From Lepidodermella squamata (taxonomy: Eukaryota > Animalia > Gastrotricha): a stretch of DNA of 64,000 nucleotides. The position numbers were made by a program, and so were the translations under genes. The notes under the pieces are model-generated. The model made no database searches. It saw nothing but the letters and a program-made list of their open reading frames with translations, and had not been told where the DNA came from. The DNA is taken from assembly GCA_047495785.1 (NCBI GenBank), contig JBLDXI010000024.1, positions 4,588,001 through 4,652,000 of the forward strand, read 5' to 3'. This document shows, piece by piece, positions 9,495 through 53,945 of this stretch (within the stretch, counting starts at the first letter, position 1; each line of letters starts with the position of its first letter).

Positions 9495-12400
9495 ATGCGA
9501 CTTCTTCTGCTGGGTTTTTCTGTAATCTTTCTGATCAATTTGAGAGCTGCCAAAGGCCGTTAGTGCGTTGAAAGCAGAAAATATGACCTCATTTTTTCTT
9601 TACAGAGACATGTTACCCAGCCTGCCAGAATGGCAATTGCACAGCGACAAACACGTGCTCGTGCAACATTGGGTGGGGCGGAGCTCAATGTGAACAAGCG
9701 GCACCAACAAGTTAGTATCATCTGCTTAAGGCTACATATTATTGATTATTAATCATTCCAAACTTAGTTTGTACGAGCAGTGCTCAATGCGCTAATGGTG
9801 GGACATGCTCAGAAAAGAACTGTTATTGCCCTGGTTCATGGACAGGCCCAGCATGCGCAGACACAGGTTTGCTTCTACCTTATATTGGGATTTGCCCATC
9901 ATTTTGGACCTGATATAGGAACTGTTATGTGTCATCCAACTGGCTACGACTATCCATACTGCTACAACGGCGGCACCTGCACTTGGAGTGGATCAACAAG
10001 CGCTTGCTACTGCAGAAATGGATACACCGGGAAATATTGTGAAACAGGTTTGTTTCTATCGACTCCCTTCCATTAGATATTCTGTCTCTGCCTTCCTCTA
10101 GTTCTGTGTAGCCAACCGTGTCAAAATGGAGGTTCCTGTACTGCTACCGAAACTTGCAACTGTGTTGGTGGTTATACTGGGACTTACTGCAATACATTTT
10201 CTTGTGCAAGCCCGTGTCAAAATGGTGGCAGTTGTGTGGCTCCTAATACTTGCAGCTGCGTGGATGATTGGACTGGGCCAACATGCAATACATGTGAGGA
10301 GATATTTGTCGTTTTCGATCCGTTTTATCCCGATAGTATCAATTACAGCTACTGCCTGCCAGAACATTGAACTACTGTCAAAGCTCGCCTCCTGGGGAGG
10401 TTCCATAGCAGGATCAAGCGGGGTTCCCGCAAATGGTGACGGAAATTTACTGGCTGGCAACTTCTGGCAGCCAACCGGCACAGAATGGAACATTTACATT
10501 GAATTCAACTTTGGTCGCGAGGTTTCGGTAAAAACCATCGGCATAGCGGCTGGCTCTGCTGGTATCGGTTACATCGCGACTTACTCGCTATCCTTCCTAG
10601 CTAAAGCTGGACTTGGCGAGTTGATGGTTCCTGTGCTCACAAATATGTCGGATCCTAACAGCCCACCCGTGATCTACACCACTTTCCCGAACGCGTCAAA
10701 TAACATTTATTTCTATCTAACCACTCTATGTCCTGTTGTTCGAACGCAAAAGCTGAGAATTCACGTTAAGACCGGCTCGGGAGCGCTGACTAATGTTCGC
10801 TCTCGGTTTTTGATCTACGGCTGCCCAACTTATGCTGGATGCACAGTTTGCTCAGCAGGCAGTCAATGCCTTTGCCCCATAGGTTACACTAGCAATGACA
10901 CAACTCTTAATCCATGGCCTCATTGCGGTATTTTATTGTTTCGCAATATCACTGTTCCTATCGCATTTATTTTTCAGACCAACTGACTTTGCCTGTTTTG
11001 GACTGCGAGGATATCGCGATGCGCCAGCCTAGTGCTCAAAGTGGCGTCTATACAATTTATCCGATCGGATCTCCGCCCATCCAGGTTTTCTGCGATATGA
11101 CTTCGCTTGGTGGAGGCTGGACAGTTTTCCAACGCCGCGCTTCACCAGCAGTGGATTTCAACCGAAACTGGGTCGACTATCAGTCATTTTTCGGATCATT
11201 CAGTGACAGCTTTTGGCTGGGCCTAGACAGCATCTCGACAATTACCTACACCCCCTATAACTCATATAAAATGGCCATCAAAGCTTCAGATTTGGACTTC
11301 AATTACAACGGTCTTTACACTTGGAAGGGCTTCAGAATCAGCCCTGCTGCGAGCAACTACACTCTCGCTTATACATCGGTTGGGATCGGCAATATGGGAA
11401 ACAATTTAGCGAACGCTCAGAACAGACCATTCAGCACCAAAGATCGTGACAACGATAACGTAGCTGGTTCGAATTGTGCTGCTGACAACATGGGAGGCTG
11501 GTGGTACGGCACTACATGCGGCGTCTCAAGCTTAAATGGGTAGGAAATTCGAGAAATGGGTTGAGTACCGTAATTATATAGGTTGCATTCTCAGAGTTTA
11601 CAACTCAACCGTGGCTTATCAAGGCGTTATGTGGATCCCATGGGTTACATCGGTTTTCTCTTTGCGAAAGGCGCAGATGATGGTGAGAAGACAACAAATT
11701 GACTACTTTGGAACCCCAGGTAAGATTCATGAGAAAGTTTTTATAGCTTTAATGTTTCTTTTCAAGCTATTGCATTGACCTATACTAACCCTGCTGATTG
11801 TTCGGACATTGCGATTAACATGCCAAATGCACCTAGTGGAGTCTACACGATCTATCCACCCGGCGGCAATCCAGTCCAAACGTATTGTGAAATGGTGGCT
11901 CTCGGCGGGAATTGGACTGTGATTCAAAGGAATATCTACGGTTCTCCTCAGAGCTTTAATCAAAATTACGCAAGTTACGAAACAGGCTTCGGAAATCTGA
12001 ATGACGCTTTCTACCTTGGGAATACTGCAATCAACCAGCTAACTTCAGCTGGACCTCTTTACCAACTGGCCATTGTGCTTGAATTTACAAATGGCAATTT
12101 CAGGACTGCGAGATACAAGACTTTTTCGATAGAGAAGGCAGTGACGAATTACAAATTGAATGTTACTGGTTACAACTGGCTTGACGATGTTGAAACCGCA
12201 GGCGATTCGTTACTCTCCCACTCTGGGCAAGGATTCCAGGTTTATTCCAATCGATCGGGTGGCTGGTGGTTCAAAGACTGGGTCGCTGGGTCGTGCCTCG
12301 ACTCAAATTTGAATGGAGTAGCCATGAATAACACATTCGAGCAGGGAATCGTTTGGTCTTCCTGGAAAAGCCGAGTTAATTCGATCAAAAACAGTGTCAT

Positions 12401-15400
12401 GATGATTCGGCCGTTGAACCCGAAACCTTACGATTGCTTGGATATATTCACGAACGACAACAGTAGCCAGGATGGTTTGTACTGGATATACCCCATTGGA
12501 ATGAAGGCCCTTCGAGTCTACTGCTATTTCGGGGCACTTCCTTACATATCGAACACAACAGATTATCGTGGCATAACGGTATGCATTCACTTTTCGCAAC
12601 TTCGTTTGATTAATAGGAATTATTTATAGCTCTTTCAAAAGCGAACGACTGGAAATGTGAATTTTTCAAGGGGTTGGCAAGATTATAAATGGGGATTCGC
12701 AGCACAGCCGTTCACTGCTTCCAGCGATTATTGGCTTGGTACTTATTAATACGATCATCAATTATTAATGTAATATTGATTGATAGGTAACGAGTACCTC
12801 TACCAACTAACTCGGAGGCAGTGTACCGAACTTTTCATCATCGCAACTGATCCTGGAACCGGCGGTACTAATGTAGCCCACTGGAACTATTTCTCTATAG
12901 GATCCGAGAATGATGGCTATAGATTGTACGTCGATCCAGGAAATTTTGATACTGCTTCAAATACAGGTAAATTTGGCTTTGTTTCTTGAACTAAGTATAG
13001 TTGTTACGGAATCTTGAAATTCTACAGCCAATTCATTGGACATCCACTGCTATCAGTCATTTTCTACGTTCGACAATGGTACTGCATCCAACTGTTTTGG
13101 CCCAGGTTCAACAAAAATTGAAGGTGGCTGGTGGGTTCAGGCTTCGTGCACTTATAAAGCAAATCTCAACAACGTATGGGGATCGAATTCATCGCCGAAA
13201 GCTGTAGGCTTTCTGGGATGGCAGCCTCTCAACTTGTCCATGTCAACGACCATGATGGGTGTACGGCGTAGATGTAAGATTTGACTGACTTCATGCCAAC
13301 GTAGTTGAATGTCGTTATCCCAGTGAACTCTCCGTGTAAGCTTCCGTCAGGATTTGGTTTGATTGGGGTGCAGAACCCAATTCCTCCTGCTGACGTTGTG
13401 GCTTACACTCGAGATATAGGCAATCGCTGGATATCTGGTGATCATATGAGAATTCGGTTGGCCAACTATGGCAACTGGTATTCAAACGAAGATCCGGTAT
13501 TCAAACGTGAGCATAAAAAAGCAACTGAGAATTTTAATTCGGCTAAAAATTTGAAACAGCATGGGATCCACCATTAGATTGCTCCTATTATCAAAGCCAG
13601 CAACCGGCATATCTCAAATTCGTATCTGGAATATATACCAACTTTTCTGCGGGTGATTTCTCCGGGACGGTTTTTTGCGACCAAGAAACATGGGGTATGA
13701 AGCTGAATTGCCACTTGTTTGCTCCAAAATGATTATCTCATTTTGTTACAGGTGGAGGTTGGGTTGTAATCCAACGCCGCATTGATAATACTGTTTCGTT
13801 CAATCGAACAATGGACGAGTACATCAATGGTTTCGGCTCCTTAACGGGGAACTACTGGATGGGCCTTGAAGCCATGCGGAAGATAACGGCTTCAACCTAT
13901 CATGAAGTTCTCTTCGAAATGAATGGTCCTGAGGGTTACGCATATGTTTCAGCTTCCCTGTTTTATCAGTGGGTATCAGGATATGGCTACAGCATGGCTG
14001 GATATCAGGCGTGCTCAACCGGGGGAAACTTAGTCATTTCTGCAAATGGCAGACCATTTCAAGTTGACCCGTGTGGTACCGGGGGTTGGTGGTTCCAACA
14101 GGCGTGCAATGCCTCTGCTGTCTACTCGAACCTTAATGCCCCATATAACGGGGTAGGAACTGGAGGAATCTACGCGTCGACGTACAGCGCGTCTCTGTTA
14201 AATCTGCAGTGGACCGAGATCAAAATTCGAAGATCAGCGCCAGTCCGCGGGCGCTATGTTCGTGCGAAATCCTTCAGGTGTGCCTTTGGTTCGAGTACAG
14301 TCACGACCGTCGCGTCCGCAAATGATTGCCTCAATTTGTGTACGGCTTCGACGACTTGCGTCAGTGCTGTTTTGAACGGTCAAAGTTGCGATCAACGCAC
14401 CGTCTATTGCAACCCGGGCATGGGCTCGGCAGACCCCATGTACGACACTTACTTCAGAATGGAGAAATGCACCCAATTCAGTTCATGCGGCCCGCCACCG
14501 GCAATGGGTTGGACGAATCTTGAAATTGTTGGAATGCCAACTGTCATGTCAGTCAATTACACCTGCTTACCGGGCTACACGAATGCTCTGGCTACTGGAG
14601 ATTGGACTATTTTGACATGTAATACCACAACGAAGAAGTGGATCGGCGATTGGTTGCAATGTCGCACGTTATGCGGGATTTACCCGGATTACAGTGATAC
14701 AAACGCAACTAGGCTTCCGACTGTTGATTTAAATGCAGGGGTTTACAAAATTTACTACCAATGCCCGCCGGGATTTTCGGTTATTTCCGGGAGTTTGACC
14801 CAGACATGCGCGCCGCCCTATGGGGCTTGGCAGGGAGGTGTTCCAGTTTGCCAAAATGCAAGTTGCTCACAGCCACAAACATTTGCTGGCACGACCAACA
14901 ACTTCACGACCCCTGTCTCAATTCCGCCGAATGAACGAATCATTGGAGATGCTGTCTGGCGTTACGATTGCGCGGCTGGTTATGTATTCAACGTCACAAA
15001 TTTGCCCAGCGCAACAATTAGGTGCAACATAACGACCAGGAACTGGTCTGGCACAGTTGGAACCTGCGTCGCAGATTGTTCAAGCCTTGGGGGTTGCCTT
15101 AATGGTGGCAGCTGTTCTCTCCCGAATCAATGCACCTGCGCTTTGGGCTGGATGGGAGCGAACTGCAGTGATCGTAAGCAAAAATAGTTAATGTCGTTTT
15201 CAGGAATAATTATAGATTCTGGAAAAAGTGATTAACTCCGCCCCTCTAAATATTTCTTTAATTATTCACTCGTGTTTCTAGCTGACTGTCGATCTCTTTC
15301 GAACTGTACTGGGCACGGTACTTGTATATCGTATAACAACTGTTCATGCACGATCGGTTGGCACGATGCCAATTGTTCTAGACGTAAGTTTTATTTAAAG

Positions 15401-18400
15401 TCCATTTAGGCTAAGGCCTAGTTCTTTTACAATACTAGCAAATTGTGCTCCGATTGGCCAATGTCTTAACGGAGGGACATGCGTAGCCCCGAATCAATGC
15501 ACTTGCGCAGCTGGTTGGTCTGGAACAAATTGTTCGATAGGTCGGTTTAGAAAGCTAATTTTTTGTCTTCTATTAACTGTGCGACTTCGAATTTTTAGCT
15601 GATTGCTCATCGGTTGCCAACTGCTCTGGGCACGGGTCGTGTGTAAATGTCAGCACATGCTCATGTACCTCAGGCTGGACTGGTCCTGGTTGCTCCATTC
15701 GTGAGTCTTCATCGTGAGCTAACGTTGCGATTGATACAATTTTTGTTCTCAAGCTGATTGCACCTCGCTCGGAGGGTGTCAAAATGGCGGGACGTGCGTT
15801 TCAGCAAACCAATGTTCATGTGCTGGATCCTGGTCGGGAGTCAACTGCGCGAATGGTAAGATACTGTGCTATGAATGGATTCTGTATGATCTTTCGCATT
15901 GATAGCAACTTGCTTTGCCGTTGCAAACTGTTCTGGTCACGGTTCCTGCATTGCATCGAATGTTTGTAGCTGCAATGCTGGCTGGTCTGGTCCGAGTTGT
16001 TCTAGCCCAGATTGCTCTGCTATCGGCGGGTGCCTCAATGGAGCAACTTGCTCCGCTCCGAATACCTGCACTTGTATGGCAGCCTGGACTGGAAACAATT
16101 GTGGAGCTGGTATGCCATATGAAAATTCCCTTTTTACTTCATCAGGATTCTATAGCTTTCGAGGATCCTGGTTGAACTTCTTAGAAACTTAGGTGCTCTA
16201 CGTTTGTATTCAATTTTTAGCAATTACGACAACAACCCCTCCTTCTACAGCAGTTACAACGACCGTTGCAACAGCTGCTTCGTCAACGACTGCCCAAACG
16301 ACTTCGACTGCTTTTACAACGTCAACCCAATCAGCGACTTCAGCAGCATCAACCACTGTCCAATCGACGTCCACAGGAAAATCGTCTTCTTCTTCGATTG
16401 TTCCAACTACTGTCCAATCTACAACTAAGCCGTCAACTACAACCCAGCAGGTTACAACAGTGAAGCCAAGTGAATCCATTGCTGAGCTAGCAGTGGTTTC
16501 TAAACTCCCCGATCAAGCTCTCGTTAGCAATGTATCAGCTTTAAATTCCCAGGTGTTACAAGGTGCGAGTGCGATAACGGAGAATTCCAGCCCGATAAAC
16601 GTTGTGGCTGATTCTGTAAGTCACTGTAAGTTTAACGATCCCCAAGATCAAACCCTTTTTTGGTTCCAGCAAGCATTTCTATCGCTGTCATCTGAGCTGA
16701 TAACCAGATATCAAAAAATGGCTGCGAACCTATCAGTTGAAACTATTCTTACTGTCTCTCAGGGTAATTGGCCATTTCTTTTGATATTCACTTGTAAAAT
16801 TTTCTATATTAGCTTATACTGAATCTGTGAGCTCCGTTCTAACGACGGTCGTTGAAAATAACCTATTACCTGACCCCGAATCTCCAGCAATAATCCTACC
16901 AACAACAGCTGTGAAATGCAAGGCTGATTCTTTCGACACAGAACAACATGTGACTACGCCTCCTAAAGTTGAAATGTCCTCGTCACAAACTGAGAAACTG
17001 CTGAGTGACTTCAGAAATATGTTAGAAGGCATGGCATCTATGGTGAAAGGAGCCTTATCTGCTGGGAAAGACTACAGCTTCAATGGGACCTTCTTCTCAG
17101 TCGTTATCAGCAACGCGTTGGCTGGAAATCTGCCTGGAATGAAGTTGTACACGAATCTCGCAACTGCCCGAATTCCCTTCGTCAGTAGTTTGTCGATTCT
17201 CTTGGACAATCCACCTAAAGGTCTGACAGAGACGAGCAAAATCTCCGTGGTTCTGACGGCCTATGTTTCCAACATCTTCGATCTGACCAAACCATTCAAC
17301 ATGCCAACCATTTCAATGAAAGTCTATTTCGGCTCAACAAGCCTTGTTTTGAACAAAAACTACCCAGTCCAGCTCACTGGTTATCCACTGGTCAGCAAAG
17401 CTAGACAATTATCAACTGATAAAGTCGAGTCGCAATGTGACGTGAGTAAAGTGAAATGCGACGTATCAAGTAACGCGGACAAGCTAGGCTCGTTGGCTAC
17501 ATTTCCTGTGTCAGCAGATGCAGGGGACTTCATTCTGATATTTCCGGCTATCAAATTCGACTACTCTGTTTACATTTCTCTCAATGCGACTCCGTCAGCT
17601 GGATCTTTTACTTGGTCTATCAATGTGACTGACAGTAATGTGGCTGCAAGCGTACACTCAACTCATGGCGCTTTGAGAATGAACTTCGATGTAAAAACAG
17701 AACTCAGAGTCGTAATTCCAAGTGCTGCGCTGTATTCATACATCAAGTTGAAGGCTTCGGCTGGTGCTATCATTCAAAATAACTCATTCACGCTTAGCGC
17801 CTTTGCGAAGAAGAACTTGACCCGATTTTCGCCCTTGGACGATCTACCAGCGTCCGTGTGTGAAATGCAAAAGTGTTACGGTTACCACTTGCGTATTGGA
17901 TTCGCCTCGGAAGATCAAGTCATCGGATCCAGAAGACGGCGTGATGTGAGCTCCAATTCATCTTCAGACGATTTCGAACTGGATTCAGACTCCACCGAAT
18001 CAAGAGTTTCCTTCAAATCTTCTTACTTTGGCGATTTCGGAGCTGATTTGTTGATTTCGCCAAATACGATTCAGTTCTCGGAAATCTTCTCCAACTTCTC
18101 GTCTCTTCTAGCCGATAATGCTTTTGTCTTCGCTTTTATGATCGTTTGCGTTGTTGGCTTCCTAGCCGCTGTTGGGCTAACTGTTATGTCGGATCGGGCA
18201 GATCTAAAAGATTGGGCCTTCATGCCACTATTGAGTAACAAACCGCATCACCAATACACATACTTGATTTCAGTCGACTACTACAAGGTGAAGAGGTACG
18301 AGCTGCAGCCTCAAGTCTTCATTCGACTTATCGGAGAAGGCTGTGAGACGTCTTTTCGGCAGCTACACGATGGCATGCGCAAAAACTTTGCCGGCAAGGT

Positions 18401-21400: not shown

Positions 21401-21499
21401 ACAATTTTCCCGCAAAAACAACCGGGAGGCGGCGCCTATTACGATTTTCTTAGACGATTTAGCGCGCATGACGTTTCAAAAACAGTCAGCTACAACTAA
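9495..21499 (+). CDS. Polycystin-1-like receptor/channel, copy B (multi-exon, roughly 3,400 aa): SP-5xEGF-F5/8C-4xFReD-PAN-3xSushi-7xEGF-S/T stalk-GAIN-like-TM1-PLAT-TMs-polycystin channel
   Basis: ATG 9495 with signal peptide MRLLLLGFSVIFLINLRAAKG. The short GT-AG introns I traced link the ORFs in compatible phases. FReD motifs (GGGWTVFQRR, FWLGLD, FSTKDRDND, GGWWY). PKD1 hallmarks HPWLSIIKRP..SNWTRAERLSC, GPIRIRQQRV, YKTGGYYVDL, WLDNST..FVDFVLYN. Confidence 0.88.
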
Positions 21500-21910
21500 A
21501 TTTAGCTCCATCGAATGTTGCGTCATAGACGAAATTTGAACACATGCAATGTTATCAATGAATGATTGAAACGGCTATAAAATAAACTAATGGATGCATT
21601 GAAAGAAATGGGGAAATGTTGGGTTTGCATCAGGGAAATATTTGGGGTAGCGATTTCCAATTATTTTTGCCTTTCAGGAAACTTATGGCAGGATTGTGCT
21701 CGGCAAATCCTCAGCCTTCTGCGGTTCGCAACTTTTCTGGCCAGAAAAGATATCTGTTTGAACTATTGCGTCTCAATAAGGATGGCGCGGTAGTTCGGTT
21801 TTGATGCTGGAAAAACTCGAACTCCAAGCGAAAACTCCAAGCTAATGAAATAATCATGAGGCATTTCTCGACGCCACACGCGTTTGTCGCGTTTGATTGT
21901 TCAGCGGAAT

Positions 21911-22314
21911 CTGCAACAAACACATGCTCTTGTAACATTGGGTGGGGCGGAGCTCAATGTGAGCAAGAAGCACCAACAAGTCTGTATCATCGGTTAAAGG
22001 CTTAATCCTACTAATCTTTCCATCCTCAGTTTGTACTAGCAGTGTTCGGTGCGCTAATGGCGGGACTTGCTCGGAAAAGAACTGTTATTATCCTGGTTCA
22101 TGGACAGGCCCAGCATGCGCAGACACTGGTTTGCTTCGAATCTTATTGGGTTTTACCTTTGAACCCATCTTCACGGCAAGACTACCCGGTGGCTTCGCCT
22201 GTTATGAGTTTCTCAGCCGGTTCAGTGAGCATAACTATACTAACTTTTCTGCCCCATTTAAAAGTCTGCTAATCAGACGAAAGACAAATTTGATTTGGTT
22301 AAAGTGTGGAAGCC
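21911..22314 (+). pseudogene. Chimeric relic: EGF exons 2-3 of a PKD1-like paralog fused at ~22158 to a copy of the last exon/3' UTR of copy A
   Basis: 21911-22157 matches exons 2-3 and adjacent introns of copies B-D, with C>Y damage (TGTTATTAT). 22159-22314 matches 1225-1412 with a small internal deletion. Confidence 0.88.
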
Positions 22315-25167: not shown

Positions 25168-25236
25168 TACCTTTTTGCGCTGCCTTTGGCCTATCCTAAG
25201 TGCCATGTTAGAAGCTCGTGGGGGTTTTCTATCGCA

Positions 25237-39600: not shown

Positions 39601-40497
39601 GTACTGGTGCATGTTTTTGGCTACTTTATCGAAGGGGAGAAACGACCTGGTTACTTTCATTATCGTTTTCACGATCATCACAATGATGTTCTCTGGCCTG
39701 GGCTATTTAACTCTTGGAGCAACTCAGAGTCAGTTCAGATCGATAACAGCTTCGATAATGACGTTGCTTCAAAATGTTATTGGAGTAACTGGGAGTTTGA
39801 TCTCCCTCGGCGCTCAGTCTCGATTCATCATGATCTACTGCATCGCTTACTCATCGATTGTCATGTTTTTGGCTGTCCAGATTTTCATGACCATCATAAC
39901 AGTGACGTATGATCGCATCTCTGATGACGTTGAGAATAACACTGATTGGGACAAAGAGGTGTCAGAATACATGTCCGAAGAATGGAAAAAGTTAATAACC
40001 AGGAAGCAGGCAAAGAAAGCTGAAGAAATCGTCAATAACAGCTCATTCCCTGAACGTAAGTATGAAATTCATACCTTGAGGCTATTTTAATCACACGAAT
40101 ATTTTGTATAGTTGAAGTATCCCTGAATCGATTGTCGCACCACGTAGAAGCCGCTTCGAAAAATGCTCCGCTCATCGAGGAGGATAAACGAGTTGTATGC
40201 AACATTCGTTGGGCTGAGCAGTATCTCAGCCTAACGCGTGCGAAAACTGCAAATTGTGATGACAGACGAGCTGCAGCAATATCGACATTGGCGTCGGCTG
40301 AAGGCGGCGCAAGGCGTCCTAAAAAGCTACCATCAATGGAACCACTTTTCCGGATAAACAGCCGGGTGGCGGCGCCTACTACGATTTTCTCACGCGGTTC
40401 AGTGCGCATGACGTTTCGAAAACGGCCAAGTACAACTAATTTAATCTCCATTTATTGTTGCGTCTCAAACGCAATGGCACAAATGCTTGAATTCTAA
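27651..40497 (+). CDS. Polycystin-1-like receptor/channel, copy C (same architecture as B; 1-bp frameshift near 40350, ancestral stop at 40437-40439)
   Basis: ATG 27651 with signal peptide MRLLCFSLLFLINLRAAEG. Colinear exon for exon with copy B and highly similar. Confidence 0.87.
31872..32650. mobile_element. hAT-family MITE (779 bp) in an intron of copy C
   Basis: Perfect 16-bp TIRs CAGTGCTCCGCAAACT and perfect 8-bp TSD AGCTAGAT (31864-31871, 32651-32658). GCGGCCG subterminal repeats. The equivalent intron of copy B is only ~57 bp. Confidence 0.93.
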
Positions 40498-44000: not shown

Positions 44001-47000
44001 GCCTGGACATTTTCAACTACGACAATACATCCGTTGACGGACTTTACTGGATTTACCCGATCGGAATGAAAGCCTTTCAAGTCTATTGTACCTTCCAAAC
44101 TCCGGCCTATATTACCATGCCGCCATATGATTATCGCGGAATCACAGTAAGTAATTATCAGGGAAAATTGCAAAACTTCTCAAATTTCTCCTATATTAGA
44201 TAATCCAAAAGAGATTGACAGGAAACGTCAATTTTTCGAGAGGCTGGCAGGATTATAAATGGGGCTTTCCTACCCAACTCACCGCGAACGGCGATTATTG
44301 GCTTGGTATGTTGAGACACCACTTGAATCTCTGCTAATTTTCCCAATTTTACCAAGGGTTGGAGTACATATATCAATTAACTCGGCGAACATGCACTGAT
44401 TTGTTCATTTTTACGACTGATCCTGTCACTGCAACTCCAGGGGTAGCGCATTGGCGAGATTTCAAAGTTTTCGGCGAAGACACTGGCTACAAGCTGTATC
44501 TAGACCCCGGCTATTTTGATGCCTCCTCTAACACAGGTAAAATTGTCTTTTTCTTCTGTTGAAGCAGTTTCTGAAGTCTTCCCACAGTCGATTCGATGGA
44601 CGTCCATCATAACATGCCATTTTCGACATTTGACAATGGCTCGGCATCCGCCTGCTTCGGCCCTGGAGCTGCGAAAAGCGAGGGTGGTTGGTGGATGCCG
44701 ACGACTTGTGGCTACAAAGCGAATCTTAACAACGTATGGGGTGCAACAGTAACTCCAAAAGCGATGGCCTACCAAGGATATCGGGCCTTGAATTGGTCTA
44801 TGGCGTCTTCAATGATCGGAATTCGCAGGCGGAGTAAGTTTGACTATTGAAAATTGTTTCCACGTTGATGAGTTTTTCGTGTTCAGTATCTGGCAACGCT
44901 TGCAAACTTCCTTACATGGGCTCAACAAATATTGAAACCGATGTATTCGCCCATACTCGAGAAGTTCCAGGTCGTTGGGTTTCTGGCGACCATTGGCGAA
45001 TGCGACTCTCAAATTATGGTTATTTGTTTGCGAACGAAGACCCGGTAGCAGTAGGCAAGTTTTAGCGGCCGCATTTTAGTATAATTTTAATTCTGAAATT
45101 TTTAAAGCTTGGAATACCCAGCAAGACTGCTCTTACTACCAACAACAACAACCAGCCTACCTGAAATTCGTTTCCGGGGTGTTCAGCAATTTTTCAGCCG
45201 GAGGCTTTACTGGCCCGGTATTTTGTGATCAAGAAACAATGGGTAATTATTCATATCTGATATTCAACTCGGGGTATTACATTTTTAATCATAGGCGGTG
45301 GCTGGGTGCTGATCCAGCGTCGAGTTGATAACAGCGTGTCATTCCTGCAAGATTACAACACTTACGTTGACGGGTTTGGATCCCCAACCGGGAATTACTG
45401 GCTCGGTCTTGAGGCCATGAGAAGAATAACGGCAACCGCGACTCATGAAGTGCTTTTCGAAGTTCGAGGTCCAGATGGTTACGCCTTCTCAAGTGCAACC
45501 ACATTCTACAACTGGATGCCAGCATACGGCTTTGCAATTACTGGATATCAAGCCTGTTCAACCGGTGGCAATTTCATCACTCCAATGGATAAGAAATCGT
45601 TTCGAATCGATCCTTGCAATACCGGGGGTTGGTGGTTCCAGCAAACTTGCAACAGCTCTGCGGTCCATTCGAACCTCAACGCGCCTTATGACGGAGTTGG
45701 AACAGGCGGAATTTACACGTCAACTTACAGTGGAAGTCTATTGAACCTTCAATGGACCGAGATCAAAATGAGACGCGCAGCACCACGGGGCCGTTACGTT
45801 GTAGCGAAGGGATTCCGTTGCACCTTGGGAACAAATACGACAAAGGTCGTCAGTTCAGTGATTGATTGCCTGAACCTATGCACAAATTCAGCAACGTGTC
45901 AAAGCGCCTCTATTACTGGAAATGTTTGCGACCTTCGAACTTCAGCCTGCGCGGCTGGGGCAGCTCAAGGCACAGTGAATGCCCTTTACGATACTTACTA
46001 CCGAATGGATGGATGCACCTACTTCCCGACATGTGGACCCCCGCCAGCTATGGGCTGGACGAGCCTTGAAATCGTCGGAATGCCTACGATCATGTCCGTT
46101 AATTACACTTGCCTGCCTGGTTATACGAACTCGCTCAGCGCGGATACCTGGAAAGTTCTCACCTGCAACGCGACCACGAAACGCTGGACCGGTGACTGGC
46201 TGAAATGCCAGACGTTGTGTGGAGTTTACCCAGATTTTTCGGACAGTAACGTCACTCGCTTGTCTACAGTTGATACGAATAACGGTGTGATAACCCTGTC
46301 GTACCAGTGCATACCAGGTTTCGCTCTGGTTCAGGGCGATTTGACCCAAGTCTGCGGTCCGATTTACGGTAGCTGGCAGGGAAATGCTCCTATTTGCCAA
46401 AATATCACTTGTTCCCAACCGCCTGTGTTTCCGAATACGACTAACAACTTCACTGTTCCTGTTGTAATCCCAGCAAACCAGCGTAACATTGGAAATACAG
46501 TCTGGGAGTATAAATGTGCGGCTGGTTACGTGTTCAATAACACGCTGAAAGCTACAGCAACTTTGACGTGCGATATCGTCACGACTAACTGGCTGGGTGT
46601 TGTTGGGACATGCATAGCAGATTGTTCTAGTTTGGGAGGCTGTAAAAATGGCGGGTCTTGCCTTTTGCCTGGTCAATGCACTTGCGCAGCTGGTTGGAAA
46701 GGAGTTGATTGCACATTGCGTAAGTCACTTTTCCCTGCAGATCGGAACTTCACATTATGAGGATCTAGCGACTATCTAATAAATTTATTCGAACATATTG
46801 CATTATGCGAAGCTATTTATGTCTTCATATTTTGAACATTTCCAGCGGACTGTTCGGCGATTGGTGGCTGTTCTAACGGTGGAAGTTGCGTTTCCCCCAA
46901 TTTCTGCACGTGTGCTAACGGATGGCTGGGCGCCTCCTGCACCACACGTAAGTCAACACTGAACATTGGTTTGATTTGCGACAATCAACGAATATATTCA

Positions 47001-50000
47001 GCTGATTGCTCATCCTTTGCTAACTGCTCGAGTCATGGTACTTGCACGAATCCCAACACCTGCTCGTGTACTGCAGGCTGGATCACCCCTAACTGCGGTA
47101 CTCGTAAGTAAACATAGTTTGCAGTTAACAGGATTGTCTGACCTCGACGTTTATATTGTAAATGGCACCATATTTTTGACGTTGCTAAAAGCTGTTTACC
47201 CAGTTTCCAGCATCTTTTTACAGTTCTTGATTCTTGAATGCCCCATTTTTTCTCAGCCGACTGCTCATCGATTGGTGGCTGTTTGAATGGTGGCAGCTGC
47301 GTTTCGCCCAATGTTTGCTCCTGTGCGAGTGGATGGCTGGGCGCCTCCTGCACCATACGTTAGTCTATGGAAATTATTGCTTTCAGTTGATTGCGTATTC
47401 TGAACTGTATAGCTGATTGCTCATCCGTTGCTAACTGTTCAAGCCATGGCACATGCACTAATCCTAACATCTGCTCATGTACTTCTGGCTGGATCACCCC
47501 TAACTGCGGAACTCGTAAGTATCCTCATTTTTAATGAAAAGTCGATATCGCTCATCCATCAATACTCCATAATAGTGGTAGTGTTTAGGATGGTTGACAG
47601 TTTCTGCTATCACTAAAACCATTAATTACTCCTTTTTCAACAGCTGATTGTTCTTCGCTTGGCGGTTGTAAAAACGGTGGATCTTGCACTCAGCCAAACG
47701 TATGCACATGTACTGCGGGATGGATTAGTGCCGACTGCACAACAGGTTTTTGCCCTTTTAATGCCGTTTTCATTTTTTTCGATATCAAAACTTTGTTTTC
47801 AGCAACCTGCTATACATTGGCAAATTGTTCAAGCCACGGCACGTGTATCTCTGCTAATGCTTGCTCTTGCACCGCCGGCTGGACTGGAAGTAACTGCGCT
47901 AATCCAGACTGTTCTTCGCTCGGCGGTTGTAAAAACGGAGGATCTTGTACCCAGCCTAACCAATGCACATGTACTGCGGGATGGAATGGTGTCGATTGCT
48001 CAACAGGTATTTTCCTTATAAACACCTTACCCCAATCGTTACGTGTTTCTTGCTGGTAAAATGCAAAAATCATAAATTTTCCGCAAGCATGTTTCATAAT
48101 CTTATTATAATATACAACTGGATGTTTACCTGCGTGAAACAAATGTGGCAGCAAAGAAATTTCGTTTTCGTTATCAAAATATACAACTCTATTTTAAGCG
48201 AATTGCTCGGGATTGGCAAATTGTTCGAGTCATGGTACCTGTATTTCTCCGAACACTTGCTCCTGCTCGGCCGGATGGAATGGAATTAATTGCGCAAATC
48301 CAGTCTGCACTTCGATCGGTGGTTGTAAAAATGGCGGTTCCTGCACTCAGCCTAGCGTATGCACATGCAATGCAGGATGGGGTGGTGTTGATTGCTCGAC
48401 AGGTTTCTTCCGTATAATCAACAAAATTACTTAGTGTTTCGTCTTCATCTTTAATTTTAGCAACCTGCTATACCCTGGCGAATTGTTCAAGCCATGGCAC
48501 TTGTATTTCTGCGAATACTTGTTCTTGCACCGCCGGCTGGAATGGAATTAATTGCGCTAATCCGGACTGTTCTTCGATCGGTGGTTGTCTCAATGGTGGC
48601 TCATGTACCGCGCCAAATTCCTGTAGTTGTGCATCTAATTGGACTGGCGCAAACTGCGGAACAGGTTAGTTATGAAACAATTTATTTTAGCTTTTTTACT
48701 TTTTACCGATGCTACAGTAAACAAATTGAGGTGAGTGAAAGATAGAAGTATAGATGATAGAAGTTTCGATTAACGTCATTGCTGATCATTTCTTGCACAG
48801 AATTTATGATTTATAAGACAAAGAATCCCTCCCATTTGATTTCAATGTTATTCGTACATAGCTGCTACGGCTACAGCGTTGGTATCAAGCACTACGCCCC
48901 AAACAACCGTAGCAACAACCACAGTACCACTACCAACAAACCTAACAATCGCGAATTTGACGGTCGCTGTGAAGTTGCCCGATCAAGTCCTCATCAGCAA
49001 CGTTAATGCGCTGAATAAACTTGCAGAAGAAGCAACAACAGCGATAACAAACTCCACATCTGAAGCCAGTCTAGCGGATAGTGCGGTTCGTAATATGCTT
49101 CTTGAGCGTCACAACTAATGATGTTGTTGCTATAGCAAACATTTCTAGCTTTATCCGCTGAGATGGTTAGTCGCTATCAAAAGCTGGCGGCTTCTCTGTC
49201 AACTGAAACGATTATTGCTGTTACGCAAAGTAAATTCATCTACCTTTTTCAATTTCTCACATATAATAAAATTTACAGCTTATTCGGAGTCAACGAGCTC
49301 GGTCCTCTCAGAGGTTGTAGATCGTGATTTGATCCCCTCCCCAGAAAACCCAGCAATCATCCTCCCGGCAACATCAATAAAATGCAAGGCAGATACGTTT
49401 GAATCAGAGGCCTTGGTTGTCAAGCCTCCAAAAGTTGAACTTTCCACACCTCAAACCGAGAAGCTGTACTCTGACTTCAGAAGTATGCTAGAAGCCATGG
49501 CATCCATGGTCAAAAATGCACTAGCTGTGGGCAAAGACTACAGCTTCAATGGAACGTTTTTCTCCGTGGTCATCGCCAATATTCAAGCCTCGAAGCTCTC
49601 AGGATTGAAGCTGAACACAAATTTAGCAGCTGCTGAGTTCCCGACAGCTGGGACTTTGTCTGCTTTTCTGGACAACCCGCCATCGACTCTAGCAGATACT
49701 AGCAAGATCTCAGTTGTTCTAACCGGCTACATTTCCAACATATTCGATATGACGAAACCTTTCAACATGCCAACGATTTCGGTAAATGTCTTTTTCGGAG
49801 GATCAAAGCTTGCCCTAAACAAGAAATATCGAGTTCGGTTGTCAGGGTATCCTCTCGTCAACAAAGCAAGACAGCTGTCGACGGATAAAGTTGAGTCTCA
49901 GTGCGATGTTAGCAAGGTGAAATGCGACATCACGAGTAATGCCGACAAACTTGGATCTTTGGCTCGTTTCCCGGTCTCTGTAGACGCTGGCGATTTCGTG

Positions 50001-53000
50001 CTCATCTTTCCAGCGATTAATTACGATTATTCGGTCTTCATAGCTTTGAATTCAACCCCATCTATTGGGTCCTTCACCTGGTCGATCAATGTGACTGGGA
50101 GTAGCGTCTCTGCGAGTGTTCATTCGTTGCACGGAGCTTTAAGAATGACCTTCGATCCGAAAACTGAGCTACGAGTGATAGTGCCCAGTGCTGCGCTGGC
50201 CTCTTTCGTCTACCAGAGGTCTTCCAGCAACGTAGTCAGCACGACATTCATCCTAAACGCTGTTACTAAAAAGAACTTTACCAGATTCTCGCCTTTGGAC
50301 GATCTACCAGCATCAGCTTGTGAAATGCAAAAGTGTTACGGCTACCATTTGCGCATTGGTTTCGCCTCGGAGGATCAAGTCATTGGATCCAGAAGCCGGC
50401 GTGATGTGAGCTCGAATTCTTCCTCAGATGATTTCGAACTGGATGCAGACTCCACTGAATCAAGAGTGTCTTTCAAGTCGTCTTACTTTGGGGATTTCGG
50501 AGCTGATTTGTTGATCTCCCCTAATACGATTCAGTTTTCGGAAATTTTCTCCAACTTTTCGTCTCTCTTGGCTGATAACGCCTTTGTCTTCGCTTTTATG
50601 ATCGTTTGCGTTGTTGGATTCCTAGCAGCTGTTGGGCTTACTGTTATGTCAGATCGGGCTGATCTCAAAGATTGGGCCTTCATGCCGCTATTGAGTAACA
50701 AAACACACCACCAATACACATACTTGATTTCAGTCGACTACTACAAGGTGAAGAGATACGAGCTGCAGCCCCAGGTCTTCATTCGACTTATTGGAGAAGG
50801 CTGTGAGACATCTTTCCGGCAACTACACGATGGGTTAAGGATGAACTTCGCGGGGAAAGTACCAGGAAATTTCGCCCTAATAACGGTCTATCCTATTGAA
50901 TATATTGATGCTATTGAACTGGACATCATTAGCCGCCCTTGGCTAGAGGGCACCAGGCCGTTTCAAATCTACATAGACAAAGTCGTTATTGTTGATGTTG
51001 AAACCGGTAAGAAATACATCTTCCCTGTTCGTTTAAATATGGAATCTGGCGACCGAGTTAAAACCGAATTGGCAACTGAAGACGACATTAAAAGCTTCAG
51101 GTACCTGGTTGGTGGCCACTCGAGAACAGGAATAACTGACAACCATCCTTGGCTTTCGATCATCAAGCGGCCTTTACCAAGTAACTGGACTCGAGCTGAG
51201 AGGCTCTCCTGTGTGGTCTCAGCTCTATTTATGGCTATGTTGGTGAACTGCATGTTCTACGGCCAAGAAGGCTCATCTCCTCGGATCGGGATCAATATCG
51301 GCGGCTTCTTTCGGATTTCTTGGTTTACCTTCTACACAAGTCTGGCCAGTTGTATCATCATTATTCCTCCAACAACGATTATTGCCCTAATATTCAAACG
51401 CGTGAAGAGAAAATCGGCTGAGAAAAGCAATTGGATAACCGTTTTCAACGCAGCGGTTAAAGAGAACGACGATGATGATGGTGAAGAAACAACGCAACAA
51501 AAGAAGGATAAAAAGAAGCCTTTCCAGTTGCCCTTCTGGACAGTGGGAATAGCTTGGTTCTGTAAGTCAAAGAAGCTACTCCTTTCAGTTTAGCTGATTA
51601 TTCCGTTATTAGTGGTCGCTGCTTCAGTCGGAGCCTCAGCTTTCTTAGTGATTATGTACAGTCTTCAATGGGGACGAGAAAAATCCTTGCAATGGCTTTC
51701 CAGTATGGGGATGCACATTATTCAAGATGTTATCGTCGTTCAATCCGTGAAGGTCCTTCTGGTCTCAGTTTTCACCTCGTCCCTTCTAAAGCTACCTGAT
51801 GATGGAGTTTCCTTGGGGAAATTGGTTTACTCTCGATGTAAGTAGATATTCCTTATTCTGATAAAAGTATAATAAGCCTGCTTTTTCAGACAACAAATCC
51901 GAGAAAACAATCGTCTTCAAACGAATGAGAAATACAATCGCTGGCATAGCGCATCACATCGCTTATGTCATCGTTTTCGCTCTGGTAATTGCCACAACAC
52001 AGAATACGTATCGCTACCAGCTTGTCAGGGATATTCGGCCGCTAGTTGCCGTCGACAATGTGTTACAGGTTTTAGACCCGATTCTAGACCACGGCGACAT
52101 TTTCGACTGGCTCGGGAAAAAAATTATACCCAACTTCCTAAATGGAAATCAGTTGAACTACGGCGGAATTTTCAACTTGAAAAACATTTACGTGGTTCCG
52201 AATCATGATGTTGTGATAGTCGGTCCAATCAGGATCAGGCAACAAAGAGTCGCATCGACGCGTTGTCCTGTAGCAAAGTCAATTGTGCCTTCCTTCGTGA
52301 ATCGTTACATTCAAAATCTGGGCGCTTTGAACGTTTCTTGTCAGGATTCGTATTCTAACGAAGCAGGCTGGGGGGCTTCATCAGAAACTCGCGACTACGG
52401 CTTCGCTTGGACCAATCTTTCCACATCCTTTGCCAGTGAATTCAACGTGTCATCTGATGTCGCGCCTTGGCTGTATCGAGAAGATTCAAACGGGTTTCCT
52501 TATTCTGGCTGGGCAGCTATCTACAAAACAGGGGGTTACTACGTGGACTTGCCATCAAAAATGTGGAAAGCTCAGCTATTAGTTGCTAATCTGAAAGCTG
52601 GGAAATGGCTTGATAACTCGACATCGGTGTTTTTCGTCGACTTCAACTTGTATAACTCACAAATCAACCTGTTTCTCACGGTCAAAATCGTTTTTGAGGC
52701 TCTATCAGCCGGTGGGATGAACTATCACGCTAGAATTTATCCGATGCAGCTCTACCAATACTCAGGCGCAAGTAGCATCTTGATCTTCATCATTCAGGGT
52801 CTATGGATAATTCTCCTAATAACTGAGACTGTTAAAGCAGCCTACTTGATGAAAAAAGCTGGAGTGAAACAGCATTTGAAGGATGGCTGGAATCTATTGG
52901 AACTTGTGTCGATTCTTTGTGCCTATGGCATTGTCGGTTTATTCGCTGCAAGAATCTACAACATCATCAAAGTTATCACGAAAATGCAGACGGATCGTTC

Positions 53001-53945
53001 ATCATTTATAAATCTGGACCTACTAGTTAACTGGGATGAGCTGATGGCTAATCTCTACGGATTAACCTTTTTCATGACCATGTTGTTGTTCTTTCGAAAT
53101 CTAAAGTTCAACAAATACTGGTGCATGTTCCTGGCTACGTTATCGAAGGGCAGAAACGACTTGCTCTCTTTTATCATCGTGTTCACGATCATCACCATGA
53201 TGTTCTCTGGTCTGGGATATTTGACTATGGGGCAAACTCAAAGCGAGTTTAGATCGATAACAGCTTCGATAATGACACTGCTTCAAAATGTGATAGGAGT
53301 AACTGGGAGTTTGATCTCCCTCGGCGCTCAGTCTCGATTCATCATGATCTATTGCATCGCTTACTCATCAATCGTCATGTTCTTAGCCGTCCAGATTTTC
53401 ATGACCATCATAACTGTGACGTACGACCGGATTTCCGATGACGTCGAGAATAATACTGATTGGGACAAGGAGGTGTCTGAATACATGGACGAAGAATGGC
53501 AGAAATTGGTATCTCGAAAGTCTACCAAGGTCAGCAATGTTACCCAGAGCTCTGGAGTCTACTCCGATCGTAAGTTTTCAAATTTCCATATCCTTCTGAT
53601 TAATTGATTTCTGATTTAGTTGAAAAGTCACTCGTTCGCTTAACAAAGCTAACCGATTGTATGATTGATAACAAGCCGATTCTCAATGAAGACAAACGAG
53701 TTGCATGCAACCTTCGCTGGGCTCAACATCATCTCAACCTCACTCGTTGCGACTCAGCGAGTGAGCATGCAGGACGCTCTGATGAATCATCACCATCAGC
53801 CGTATATGGTCAAAGACGCCCTAAGAAACTTCCTTCTGTTGAGCCTATGTTTCCAGTTAAACTGTCAGGAGGAGGAGCGTACTACAACTTTATGAAAAGA
53901 TTCAGCGCTCATGACGTTTCAAAATCATTTGAACCAAGTTCTTAG
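41054..53945 (+). CDS. Polycystin-1-like receptor/channel, copy D (more divergent; 12 membrane-proximal EGFs, short S/T stalk)
   Basis: ATG 41054 with signal peptide MWNRVLLTSIILHLSPWVVA. Same domain order and shared intron positions. Stop at 53943-53945. Confidence 0.88.

What the first reader, a model, noticed from the sequence alone, without database searches (positions are those of the whole stretch)
9495..53945. Tandem family of polycystin-1-like channels tipped with four fibrinogen-related domains
Seen: spliced models join EGF, discoidin, 4 FReDs, PAN-like, 3 Sushi, an EGF array and a mucin stalk to an 11-TM PKD1-type core in three complete copies, with a fourth partial copy. No PKD/Ig repeats or REJ module were recognisable. 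Ectodomains, especially in copy D, differ visibly more than the TM core. Known: invertebrate FReDs are mostly pattern-recognition or adhesion modules, and PKD1-type subunits assemble with PKD2-type subunits into cation channels. Inference: a diversified family coupling glycan, microbe or gamete recognition directly to Ca2+ entry. I do not know of a described polycystin with this architecture.
Basis: partly seen in the sequence, partly recalled or inferred. Interest (0 to 1): 0.85.

Follow-up and report, generated by a model that had tools for sequence, protein, structure and literature searches.

The report
Fibrinogen-headed polycystin-1-like receptor gene array
Three intact neighbouring genes of an unidentified small-genome invertebrate each encode a giant polycystin-1-type membrane channel subunit. 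Its outer end is a stack of lectin-like domains, including four fibrinogen-related ones, and the genes belong to a family of about 30 such genes, an unusual head on a known kind of receptor whose function is untested.

Summary
The window carries three complete tandem genes on the + strand:
- A: 9495-21499, 26 exons, 3517 aa.
- B: 27651-40497, 3532 aa.
- C: 41054-53945, 29 exons, 3602 aa.

All models use GT-AG introns of about 50 nt and have no internal stop. Each encodes a signal peptide, 5 EGF, a discoidin-like domain, 4 FReDs, a PAN-like domain, 3 Sushi, 7-12 EGF, a mucin stalk, a juxtamembrane module, TM1, PLAT and a 10-TM polycystin core.

The "fourth partial copy" is only a 230-bp relic. 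A further copy ends at window 1-1304.

No RNA data were reachable, so the single-transcript claim rests on DNA evidence:
- a conserved phase-1 intron joins the EGF array to the stalk;
- in two divergent paralogues the last EGF and the juxtamembrane module share one exon;
- 29 of 37 paralogues in the genome keep FReDs upstream on the same strand.

REJ, PKD repeats and the GPS HL/T triad are absent. A conserved furin-type site lies close upstream of the place where relatives have the GPS.

Ectodomains evolve about twice as fast as the core but under purifying selection.

The closest precedents are lectin-headed sea-urchin REJ proteins and the Ciona s-Themis/v-Themis pair. I rate it a new variant of a known kind. 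The scan has already reported this family elsewhere in this genome.

The parts
1..1304 (+). 3' end (channel exon and C-terminal tail exon) of a further upstream paralogue whose GAIN-PLAT exon lies just before the window (G000:C24:4584637-4586937)
   Evidence: PKD_channel E 5e-26. tblastn of protein A residues 3101-3510 gives 85% and 58% identity. Own-genome hit at 89% identity.
9495..21499 (+). Gene A: 26 exons, 3517 aa, full FReD-headed polycystin-1-like protein
   Evidence: Spliced model without internal stop, all GT-AG. Pfam. 11 TM plus signal peptide.
9495..10293 (+). Gene A exons 1-5: signal peptide (MRLLLLGFSVIFLINLRAAKG) and five EGF domains. This region is homogenised among copies by gene conversion.
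   Evidence: A-C 98% amino-acid identity and 91% nucleotide identity including introns.
10349..10927 (+). Gene A exon 6: discoidin (F5/8 type C)-like domain plus a Cys-rich tail
   Evidence: Pfam F5_F8_type_C only E 0.12. AF2 model pLDDT 59. All 50 best Foldseek hits are discoidin/neuropilin b1/FVIII C2/CBM32, TM 0.5-0.6.
10978..14239 (+). Gene A exons 7-15 (first part): four fibrinogen-related domains (residues about 393-612, 622-836, 838-1068, 1129-1330) with a 60-residue insert exon (13324-13506) before FReD4
   Evidence: Fibrinogen_C hits. FReD1 versus ficolin-1 E 1e-34 with the FSTKDRDND calcium loop kept. FReD2 and FReD4 lack that loop, and FReD3 has a changed one (alignment).
14240..15070 (+). 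PAN-like domain and three Sushi/CCP domains (inside exon 15)
   Evidence: PAN_3 E 0.017. C4b-binding protein CCP1-2 E 1.2e-6.
15071..16109 (+). EGF array of gene A: 7 EGFs in the end of exon 15 and exons 16-20. Copy C has 12.
16110..16220 (+). The contested junction: a 111-nt phase-1 GT-AG intron between the last EGF exon and the mucin-stalk exon. The equivalents are 95 nt at 35072-35166 in B and 212 nt at 48665-48876 in C.
   Evidence: Sequence read directly. Same phase in all copies. No start codon with a signal peptide downstream.
16221..16763 (+). Exons 21-22: Ser/Thr-rich mucin stalk and the first helices of the juxtamembrane module
   Evidence: Translation. Homologous segments in paralogues.
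16813..19107 (+). Exon 23: juxtamembrane beta-rich module (GAIN-like at best), furin-type site SRRRRD, degenerate GPS (YFG in place of HLT), TM1, PLAT, TM2, TM3 and the start of TM4
   Evidence: No Pfam hit. AF2 model. PLAT Z 14.7, polycystin-1 8z6b Z 10.5, adhesion-GPCR GAIN Z 5.3-6.3. hhalign to Ptychodera PKD1L2. Furin site conserved.
19163..21126 (+). Exons 24-25: TM4-TM5, S1, polycystin/TOP domain, S2-S6 channel region
   Evidence: Polycystin_dom 1e-28 and PKD_channel 2e-21. Hydropathy.
21180..21499 (+). Exon 26: cytoplasmic C-terminal tail ending in the conserved motif GGGAYYDFLRRFSAHDVSK
21910..22136 (+). Relic of a partial copy: EGF exons 2-3 only
   Evidence: tblastn to protein A residues 34-92, 81-91% identity. 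blastn.
22306..23532 (+). ORF fragments that I take for a non-LTR retroelement 3' end, directly after the relic
   Evidence: ORFs. No Pfam hit. The assignment rests only on a Cys/His motif in the translation and is inference.
27651..40497 (+). Gene B: 26 exons, 3532 aa, collinear with A (85-88% nucleotide identity including introns)
31858..32708 (+). Enlarged intron 14 of gene B, holding an element of about 0.8 kb with roughly 25-bp terminal inverted repeats (MITE-like)
40338..40345 (+). One-base frame difference in the last exon of B relative to A and C, which replaces the conserved C-terminal motif
   Evidence: DNA alignment. Differing protein ends.
41054..53945 (+). It has its own signal-peptide exon (41054-41114), five extra EGFs and the most divergent ectodomain.

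Best explanation
Each of the three genes encodes one polypeptide of about 3,500 residues. A secreted-type, lectin-like head sits on a mucin stalk and is covalently continuous with a polycystin-1-type 11-TM core. The head is 5 EGF, a discoidin-like domain, four fibrinogen-related domains (the first ficolin-like with an intact calcium loop), a PAN-like domain, 3 Sushi and an EGF rod. The core is TM1, PLAT, TM2-5, TOP domain and a 6-TM PKD channel region.

The genes are young tandem members of an old, lineage-specific family of about 30 such genes.

Shown: the architecture, intact reading frames, purifying selection on every domain, and linkage of heads and cores across the family.

Inferred: the head binds a carbohydrate, acetylated or protein ligand. 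The core, whose pore loop has IGV where PKD2 has LGD (a comparison made from memory), does not conduct alone. It instead assembles with one of the genome's PKD2-type subunits, so that ligand binding at the head changes cation/Ca2+ entry or PLAT/C-tail signalling. This is what is proposed for sea-urchin REJ, PKDREJ, Ciona s-Themis and the lectin domain of polycystin-1.

Because the GPS triad is lost and a conserved R-X-K/R-R site lies about 35 residues upstream, cleavage into head and core fragments, if it happens, would be by a furin-type protease.

The biological setting is unresolved. The size, age and conservation of the family make a sensory or surveillance repertoire somewhat more likely than a fast-evolving gamete-recognition locus.
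For: One gene:
- Complete ORFs across 25-28 conserved GT-AG junctions in three copies.
- The EGF-to-stalk intron is 95-212 nt, phase 1, in all copies.
- Paralogues L013 and L014 carry the last EGF and the first juxtamembrane helix in one open exon.
- 29 of 37 paralogues have same-strand FReDs within 12.5 kb upstream.
- A-B dS is the same in head (0.38) and core (0.40).
- In a metagenomic relative the ectodomain ORF is joined to the core ORF by a textbook 59-nt phase-1 intron.

Domains.

PKD1-type core:
- PLAT Z 14.7 and polycystin-1 Z 10.5.
- Polycystin_dom and PKD_channel.
- 11 TM.
- The nearest named relatives are PKD1L2-like proteins.

Partner candidates: two loci scoring 224-261 bits on PKD_channel, against 80-118 bits for PKD1-type loci.

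Selection: omega is 0.14 in the head and 0.07 in the core.

Precedents: PMC1934368, PMC9265791, PMC7728438.
Against: - There is no transcript evidence. The only run that holds the stretch behaves as DNA: it covers the introns and shows no joints.
- No ligand, tissue or channel activity is known.
- FReD2 and FReD4 lack the calcium loop, and FReD1 has Gly where ficolin-1 has the pocket His. Canonical acetyl-group binding is therefore uncertain.
- The GAIN fold is only weakly matched (Z 5.3-6.3).
- Gene B has a frame change in its tail.
- FReD heads were not seen in the few kb available upstream of the metagenomic relatives. Conservation of this head outside this genome is therefore unshown.
Confidence: 0.7

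Rival explanations
1. Two genes per unit: a secreted EGF-discoidin-FReD-Sushi-EGF lectin and, immediately downstream, a separate polycystin-1-like gene that starts at the stalk exon. They would be a linked ligand/receptor pair, like v-Themis and s-Themis of Ciona.
For: No RNA evidence links the parts. In Ciona a fibrinogen-like gene and a PKD1-like gene are tightly linked partners (PMC9265791). Database gene calls for the closest relatives start near the stalk (P0001 and P0003), although those calls come from a prokaryote-style caller that cannot join exons.
Against: - The gap is only 95-212 nt with canonical phase-1 splice sites, and no AATAAA was seen in the intron of copy A (read by eye).
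- The downstream part has no start codon with a signal peptide, yet about 600 extracellular residues precede TM1.
- L013 and L014 encode EGF and juxtamembrane module in one exon.
- The relative L001 shows a textbook intron at the same place.
Confidence: 0.07
2. The same single protein, but its role is gamete recognition on sperm. It would be a REJ/PKDREJ/s-Themis analogue in which the fibrinogen-type partner domain has been fused in cis, triggering Ca2+ entry on contact with the egg coat.
For: - PKD1-family proteins with lectin heads act in the sea-urchin acrosome reaction, and PKDREJ is testis-specific (PMC1934368).
- Ciona self-recognition pairs a PKD1-like sperm receptor with a fibrinogen-like egg-coat protein and ends in Ca2+ influx (PMC9265791, PMC7018956).
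- The genes have few, large exons, as PKDREJ-type genes do.
- Heads diverge faster than cores.
Against: - About 30 paralogues that are old (down to 39-50% identity in the GAIN-PLAT exon).
- All domains are under purifying selection (omega 0.04-0.38). Only scattered 50-codon windows are raised, one above 1 on a very low dS.
- No expression data.
Confidence: 0.2
3. The proteins are mainly adhesion or mechanosensory tethers. The EGF rod, mucin stalk and lectin-like modules anchor the cell or cilium to matrix, as proposed for polycystin-1 itself, without specific ligand recognition.
For: - Long EGF arrays and a mucin stalk are typical spacer or tether elements.
- Two of four FReDs lack the calcium loop.
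- Polycystin-1 is widely discussed as a mechanosensor (abstracts listed).
Against: A family of about 30 with differently diverged heads is hard to explain by a generic tether. FReD1 keeps the ficolin-like calcium loop.
Confidence: 0.1

Closest known systems
Sea-urchin receptor-for-egg-jelly proteins (SpREJ1-10) and mammalian PKDREJ/PKD1L2/PKD1L3 (PKD1 family)
   Same: - Large type-I ectodomain with carbohydrate-recognition modules on a PKD1-type core with PLAT and, in many members, a 6-TM PKD channel region.
- A multigene family.
- Expected partnership with PKD2-type subunits (PMC1934368).
- The nearest named sequence relatives are PKD1L2-like proteins of Lingula, Ptychodera, amphioxus and Macrostomum.
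   Different: - Those proteins carry C-type lectin, SUEL, WSC, PKD repeats, CUB, MAM or LDLa heads, plus REJ and GPS (PMC1934368).
- Here the head is discoidin-like plus four FReDs plus PAN, Sushi and EGF.
- REJ is not detectable, and the GPS C-x-C-x-HLT aligns to FKSSYFG.
- The family has about 30 members, against 10 in sea urchin and 5 in human.
Ciona s-Themis / v-Themis self-incompatibility pairs
   Same: The same two module types work together: a PKD1/PKDREJ-like sperm receptor (11 TM with a PKD channel domain in s-Themis-B/B2) and a fibrinogen-like protein. The two are genetically linked, and recognition ends in Ca2+ influx (PMC9265791, PMC7018956).
   Different: [quoted passage not shown] Here the FReDs are on the same strand and, by the models, in the same polypeptide as the core. 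s-Themis has REJ and GPS. Neither polymorphism nor expression was tested here.
Ficolins / FIBCD1 / invertebrate FREPs (fibrinogen-related lectins)
   Same: FReD1 matches ficolin-1 at E 1e-34 and keeps the FSTKD-x-DND calcium loop and the flanking Cys/GGWWY motif. The genome has a large FReD repertoire, at least 150 hits.
   Different: - Ficolins and FREPs are soluble or single-pass and oligomerise through collagen, coiled-coil or IgSF parts.
- Here four FReDs stand in tandem inside a giant 11-TM protein.
- The ficolin pocket His is Gly in FReD1.
- FReD2 and FReD4 lack the calcium loop.
Adhesion GPCRs and polycystin-1 GAIN/GPS autoproteolysis
   Same: A beta-rich juxtamembrane module precedes TM1, and the strand motif FGAxLxxxPNTIxF is conserved. 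There are weak fold matches to GAIN domains of CELSR1, GPR126, CD97, GPR110 and latrophilin-3, Z 5.3-6.3. Atlas look-alike clusters carry GPS plus PLAT.
   Different: The HL/T triad and the GPS cysteines are missing. A conserved polybasic furin-type site lies about 35 residues upstream instead.

Membership tests
Polycystin-1 (PKD1 / PKD1L / REJ) family | 11 transmembrane segments: TM1, then a PLAT/LH2 domain in the first cytoplasmic loop, then TM2-5 and a 6-TM channel-like region | tested here: met
   Hydropathy gives 11 TM in A, B and C. PLAT fold Z 14.7, rmsd 1.7 A over 107 residues. Polycystin-1 chain 8z6b_A Z 10.5 over model residues 424-780. Foldseek hits to PC1/PC2 complexes.
Polycystin-1 (PKD1 / PKD1L / REJ) family | Polycystin (TOP) domain between S1 and S2, and a PKD_channel region | tested here: met
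   Polycystin_dom E 1.4e-28 and PKD_channel E 2.2e-21 in exon 25.
Polycystin-1 (PKD1 / PKD1L / REJ) family | GPS motif (C-x-C-x-H-L-T/S) at the end of a GAIN domain, just before TM1 | tested here: not met
   No Pfam GPS hit at E up to 5. hhalign places Ptychodera CSCNHLTSFGS opposite FKSSYFGDFGA. The same holds in paralogues.
Polycystin-1 (PKD1 / PKD1L / REJ) family | GAIN fold of the juxtamembrane module | tested here: inconclusive
   Several adhesion-GPCR GAIN chains match model residues about 48-197, but only at Z 5.3-6.3, within the range the tool calls common. The model is of medium confidence (pLDDT 67). Atlas look-alikes carry GPS plus PLAT.
Polycystin-1 (PKD1 / PKD1L / REJ) family | REJ module | tested here: not met
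   No Pfam REJ hit. The REJ part of Ptychodera PKD1L2 does not align to the family profile, while GPS-to-PLAT aligns at E 1e-73. hPKD1L3 also lacks REJ yet is counted in the family (PMC1934368).
Polycystin-1 (PKD1 / PKD1L / REJ) family | PKD/Ig-like repeats in the ectodomain | tested here: not met
   No PF00801 hit in any of the 15 ORFs of copy A scanned, which cover its long exons but not the short EGF and FReD3 exons.
Polycystin-1 (PKD1 / PKD1L / REJ) family | Assembly with a PKD2-type subunit | not testable with these tools
   Two PKD2-type candidate loci exist (C7:32696-33370 at 261 bits, C1:4597891-4598565 at 224 bits).
Fibrinogen-related domain (FReD) lectins | Fibrinogen_C domain by sequence | tested here: met
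   Four per protein. FReD1 matches ficolin-1/-2, tenascin-R and angiopoietin-like proteins at E 1e-34 to 1e-26.
Fibrinogen-related domain (FReD) lectins | Calcium-binding loop (D-x-D-x-D) and neighbouring disulfide next to the ligand pocket | tested here: inconclusive
   Kept in FReD1 (FSTKDRDNDNVAGSNCA). Changed in FReD3. Deleted in FReD2 and FReD4. The ficolin-1 pocket His aligns to Gly in FReD1.
Ciona s-Themis / v-Themis system | The PKD1-like receptor and the fibrinogen-like ligand are separate genes, the ligand nested in intron 1 on the opposite strand | tested here: not met
   FReD exons lie on the same strand and are joined in frame to the core.
Ciona s-Themis / v-Themis system | Allelic hypervariability and gonad-specific expression | not tested
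   No population or RNA data were reachable.

The most novel reading that the evidence does not exclude
The cis-fusion of fibrinogen-related domains to a polycystin-1-like core is a Rosetta-stone counterpart of the Ciona v-Themis/s-Themis pair. On this reading FReDs are general, ancient ligands or co-receptors of PKD1-type ectodomains. The roughly 30 paralogues would form a self/non-self or cell-cell recognition code in which the FReD head of one molecule engages the juxtamembrane module of another, in trans or in cis as a tethered ligand. Engagement would gate a polycystin channel, with furin cleavage replacing GPS autoproteolysis as the priming step.
Probability: 0.08. Interest if true: 0.85.

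Novelty: new variant of a known kind. Interest (0 to 1): 0.55.

Why it matters
Polycystin-1-type proteins are thought to be receptors that control PKD2-type cation channels, yet physiological ligands are known for almost none of them.

This family has about 30 members. The core is constant, and the head is built from modules with well-understood binding chemistry: a ficolin-like FReD, a discoidin-like domain and Sushi domains. That offers a natural series for asking how binding at the head is passed to the channel.

It also connects two separate literatures: fibrinogen-related lectins in invertebrate recognition, and polycystins in fertilisation and sensory cilia. It gives a cis-fused counterpart to the Ciona self-incompatibility pair.

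The loss of the GPS triad, together with a conserved furin-type site, suggests another route to the head/core cleavage that matters for polycystin-1 and adhesion GPCR signalling.

Tried and rejected
- RNA evidence. When laid on 13800-19400 it covered every bin, introns included, as short contigs with no joints. It is therefore DNA and says nothing about transcripts.
- Architecture search in databases. The search for homologous proteins with the channel exon gave one unnamed metagenomic hit, because the tool only sees proteins of similar length. The exhaustive search with the 800-aa exon gave 1088 relatives. A local FReD profile found no FReD in the best 150 (157 sequences held). This is a limited test, not a full architecture census.
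I replaced it with a cross-tabulation of coordinates from two own-genome searches.
- FReDs upstream of the metagenomic relatives. None were found in the 1.4-3 kb available. Those contigs show EGF, mucin, Sushi and a possibly LamG-like stretch (my reading of the translation, not tested).
- Organism identity. A CYP3-type P450 from the window matches molluscs, nemerteans, amphioxus and fishes about equally, at 42% or less.
- Positive selection. Domain-wide omega is below 0.4 everywhere. A sliding window shows only local rises, in the discoidin-like domain's N-terminal part, in mid-FReD1 and in FReD4. One window exceeds 1 on a dS of 0.09. With three sequences this is not a test.
- Pseudogene array. 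Rejected for A and C, which are intact. B has one frame change in the last 35 codons.
Full report
**What is there.**
The window is G000:C24:4588001-4652000 of a 121-Mb assembly. On the + strand, long open frames recur three times. Self-comparison shows two copies collinear at 85-88% nucleotide identity, introns included (A about 9149-21524, B about 27308-40464). A third copy aligns only in coding parts (C, 41160-53945): about 78% in the membrane core and about 70% in the ectodomain. The exception is the 5' EGF region, at 91%.

**Gene models.**
- I delimited coding blocks by protein comparison of A with C.
- I then searched every gap for GT..AG pairs that keep the frame, choosing the pair conserved in phase and peptide in all copies.
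- The extra EGF exons and the first exon of C were found separately.
- The result is A 9495-21499 (26 exons, 3517 aa), B 27651-40497 (26 exons, 3532 aa) and C 41054-53945 (29 exons, 3602 aa).
- None has an internal stop. Introns are mostly 47-60 nt and nearly all phase 1.

**Domains.**
- Pfam finds Fibrinogen_C four times, EGF modules, Polycystin_dom and PKD_channel.
- FReD1 matches ficolin-1 at E 1e-34 and keeps the calcium loop. The pocket His of ficolin-1 aligns to Gly.
- FReD2 and FReD4 lack the calcium loop, and FReD3 has a changed one.
- Sushi repeats are supported by C4b-binding protein CCP1-2 (E 1e-6).
- PAN is only weakly supported (E 0.017).
- The discoidin call rests on Pfam E 0.12 and on a low-confidence model (pLDDT 59). 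All 50 of its best Foldseek hits are discoidin/CBM32 domains.
- The 800-aa exon has no Pfam hit at all. Its model (pLDDT 67) contains a PLAT domain (Z 14.7, rmsd 1.7 A) and aligns to polycystin-1 (8z6b_A, Z 10.5).
- Hydropathy gives a signal peptide and 11 TM segments.
- The extracellular module before TM1 matches adhesion-GPCR GAIN domains only at Z 5.3-6.3.
- A profile comparison with Ptychodera PKD1L2 aligns GPS-to-PLAT at E 1e-73. It puts CSCNHLTSFGS opposite FKSSYFGDFGA, and the REJ part does not align.

**Is it one gene?**
No RNA could be used. The single run offered covers introns and shows no joints, so it is DNA. The case rests on six DNA observations.
1. The last EGF exon ends in a phase-1 donor, and the stalk exon begins after 111, 95 and 212 nt in A, B and C with a pyrimidine tract and AG.
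2. The downstream part has no start codon with a signal peptide, although about 600 extracellular residues precede TM1.
3. In two paralogues that are 54-55% identical in the GAIN-PLAT exon (L013, L014), the last EGF runs without interruption into the first helix of the juxtamembrane module, in one open frame. tblastn E is 6e-13 and 7e-11.
4. Of 37 paralogues of the GAIN-PLAT exon in the genome, 29 have Fibrinogen_C hits on the same strand within 12.5 kb upstream. This holds down to 39-50% identity.
5. Synonymous divergence between A and B is the same in head and core (0.38 and 0.40).
6. In the closest outside relative (a metagenomic contig, 41% identity), an ectodomain ORF ending in a Sushi domain is joined to the core ORF by a 59-nt GTAAGT...TATAG phase-1 intron. 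The 1632-aa protein in the database is only the large 3' exon.

I put the single-gene reading at about 0.9.

**Evolution.**
- Every domain is under purifying selection (omega 0.04-0.38).
- The head evolves about twice as fast as the core (A-B omega 0.14 against 0.07; A-C identity 67% against 81%).
- The five N-terminal EGFs are homogenised among copies (98% identity). C nevertheless has a different signal-peptide exon.
- C has five more EGFs in the rod.
- Sliding windows show local rises in the discoidin-like domain, in FReD1 and in FReD4, but nothing that amounts to a test.

**Family and surroundings.**
- A further copy ends at window 1-1304.
- The partial copy inside the finding is a 230-bp relic of EGF exons 2-3 next to what I take for a retroelement fragment.
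- The genome has at least 55 PKD_channel loci. Two score far higher than the rest and look PKD2-type, so they are possible partners.
- Earlier agents of this scan described the same family at two other places in this genome (s1-374167; s1-429981, 'at least 28 genes'). My independent count agrees.

**How it probably works.**
By analogy with named systems, the head binds a ligand and the core modulates a PKD2-type channel.
- The pore loop reads IGV where PKD2 has LGD. This comparison is from memory, so treat it as a lead.
- Precedents are sea-urchin REJ proteins with C-type and SUEL lectin heads (PMC1934368) and activation of the PC-1/PC-2 complex by the PC-1 N-terminus (PMC7728438, title and abstract only).
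- A further precedent is the Ciona pair of a PKD1-like sperm receptor with a fibrinogen-like egg-coat protein, which ends in Ca2+ influx (PMC9265791, PMC7018956).
- A polybasic R-X-K/R-R site about 35 residues before the last juxtamembrane strand is conserved in A, B, C and the five paralogues checked (L005, L007, L012, L013; not found in L010). It is also present in the metagenomic relative P0001 and in a Lingula protein. It may replace GPS autoproteolysis; this is inference.

**Novelty.**
- Named relatives carry CUB, LDLa, MAM, FN3, WSC or PKD heads together with REJ and GPS.
- None of the 157 nearest sequences has a FReD.
- Four full-text searches found no paper describing FReD and a PKD channel in one protein.
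- Variable lectin-type heads are, however, a known property of the family.
- I therefore class this as a new variant of a known kind, of moderate interest, and limited above all by the lack of expression and ligand data.

Noticed in passing
window 17900-17930 (gene A, SRRRRD); the same position in B and C, and in L005, L007, L012, L013, P0001 and P0009: A furin-type polybasic site (RRRR, RSRR, RKRR, RRKR, RVKR) is conserved about 35 residues upstream of the strand that carries HL/T in other polycystins. The HL/T triad itself is replaced by YFG. This may mean a switch from GPS autoproteolysis to convertase cleavage.
   Followed up: partly
window 9595-10290 versus 41160-41858 (also 27750-28450): The five N-terminal EGF exons and their introns are 91% identical between A and C, while the rest of the ectodomain is about 70%. 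This points to gene conversion confined to the 5' end. C nevertheless uses a non-homologous signal-peptide exon (41054-41114).
   Followed up: partly
window 31858-32708: Intron 14 of gene B is 851 nt, against 57 nt in A. It holds an insertion with roughly 25-bp terminal inverted repeats (CTAGATCAGTGCTCCGCAAAC...), which looks like a MITE. No other copy was found in the loci held.
   Followed up: partly
window 40338-40345: Gene B has a one-base frame difference in its last exon. It removes the C-terminal motif GGGAYYxFxxRFSAHDVSK that A and C share. This is either a slightly damaged gene or an assembly error.
   Followed up: partly
window 25095-26029: Four tRNA genes (Phe-GAA, Pro-TGG, Glu-TTC on +, Lys-CTT on -) lie clustered in the spacer between genes A and B.
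   Followed up: no
window 58563-63536 (- strand): Downstream neighbour ORFs encode discoidin (F5/8 type C, E 1e-14) and concanavalin-like/LamG domains. This is another lectin-type gene beside the array. Upstream neighbours are a CYP3-type P450 (2126-3352, -) and a Cys-loop receptor fragment (4767-5675, -).
   Followed up: no
G000:C24:3053062-3056814, 3341826-3345368, 3363231-3366772, 3387930-3391471, 3426151-3429722, 3450955-3454526: Other FReD arrays. Open frames of about 790 aa each hold three or four Fibrinogen_C domains in one exon. No polycystin core of this family was scored within 12.5 kb downstream of any of them on the same strand. FReD clusters also occur on contigs C56, C11, C12, C21 and C29. 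The tandem-FReD head may exist on other anchors too.
   Followed up: no
L001:1-6344 and L035:1-6480 (metagenomic contigs of other organisms): These are the closest outside relatives of the core (41-45% identity). They have almost intron-free genes, and the membrane-proximal ectodomain is built of EGF, a mucin stretch and Sushi (plus what looks to me like a LamG-type stretch, not tested), with no FReD in the stretch available. In L001 the ectodomain ORF is joined to the core by a 59-nt phase-1 intron.
   Followed up: partly
G000:C7:32696-33370 and G000:C1:4597891-4598565: Two loci match the PKD_channel model far better (261 and 224 bits, full length) than any PKD1-type locus (118 bits or less). 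They are likely PKD2-type subunits and candidate partners.
   Followed up: no
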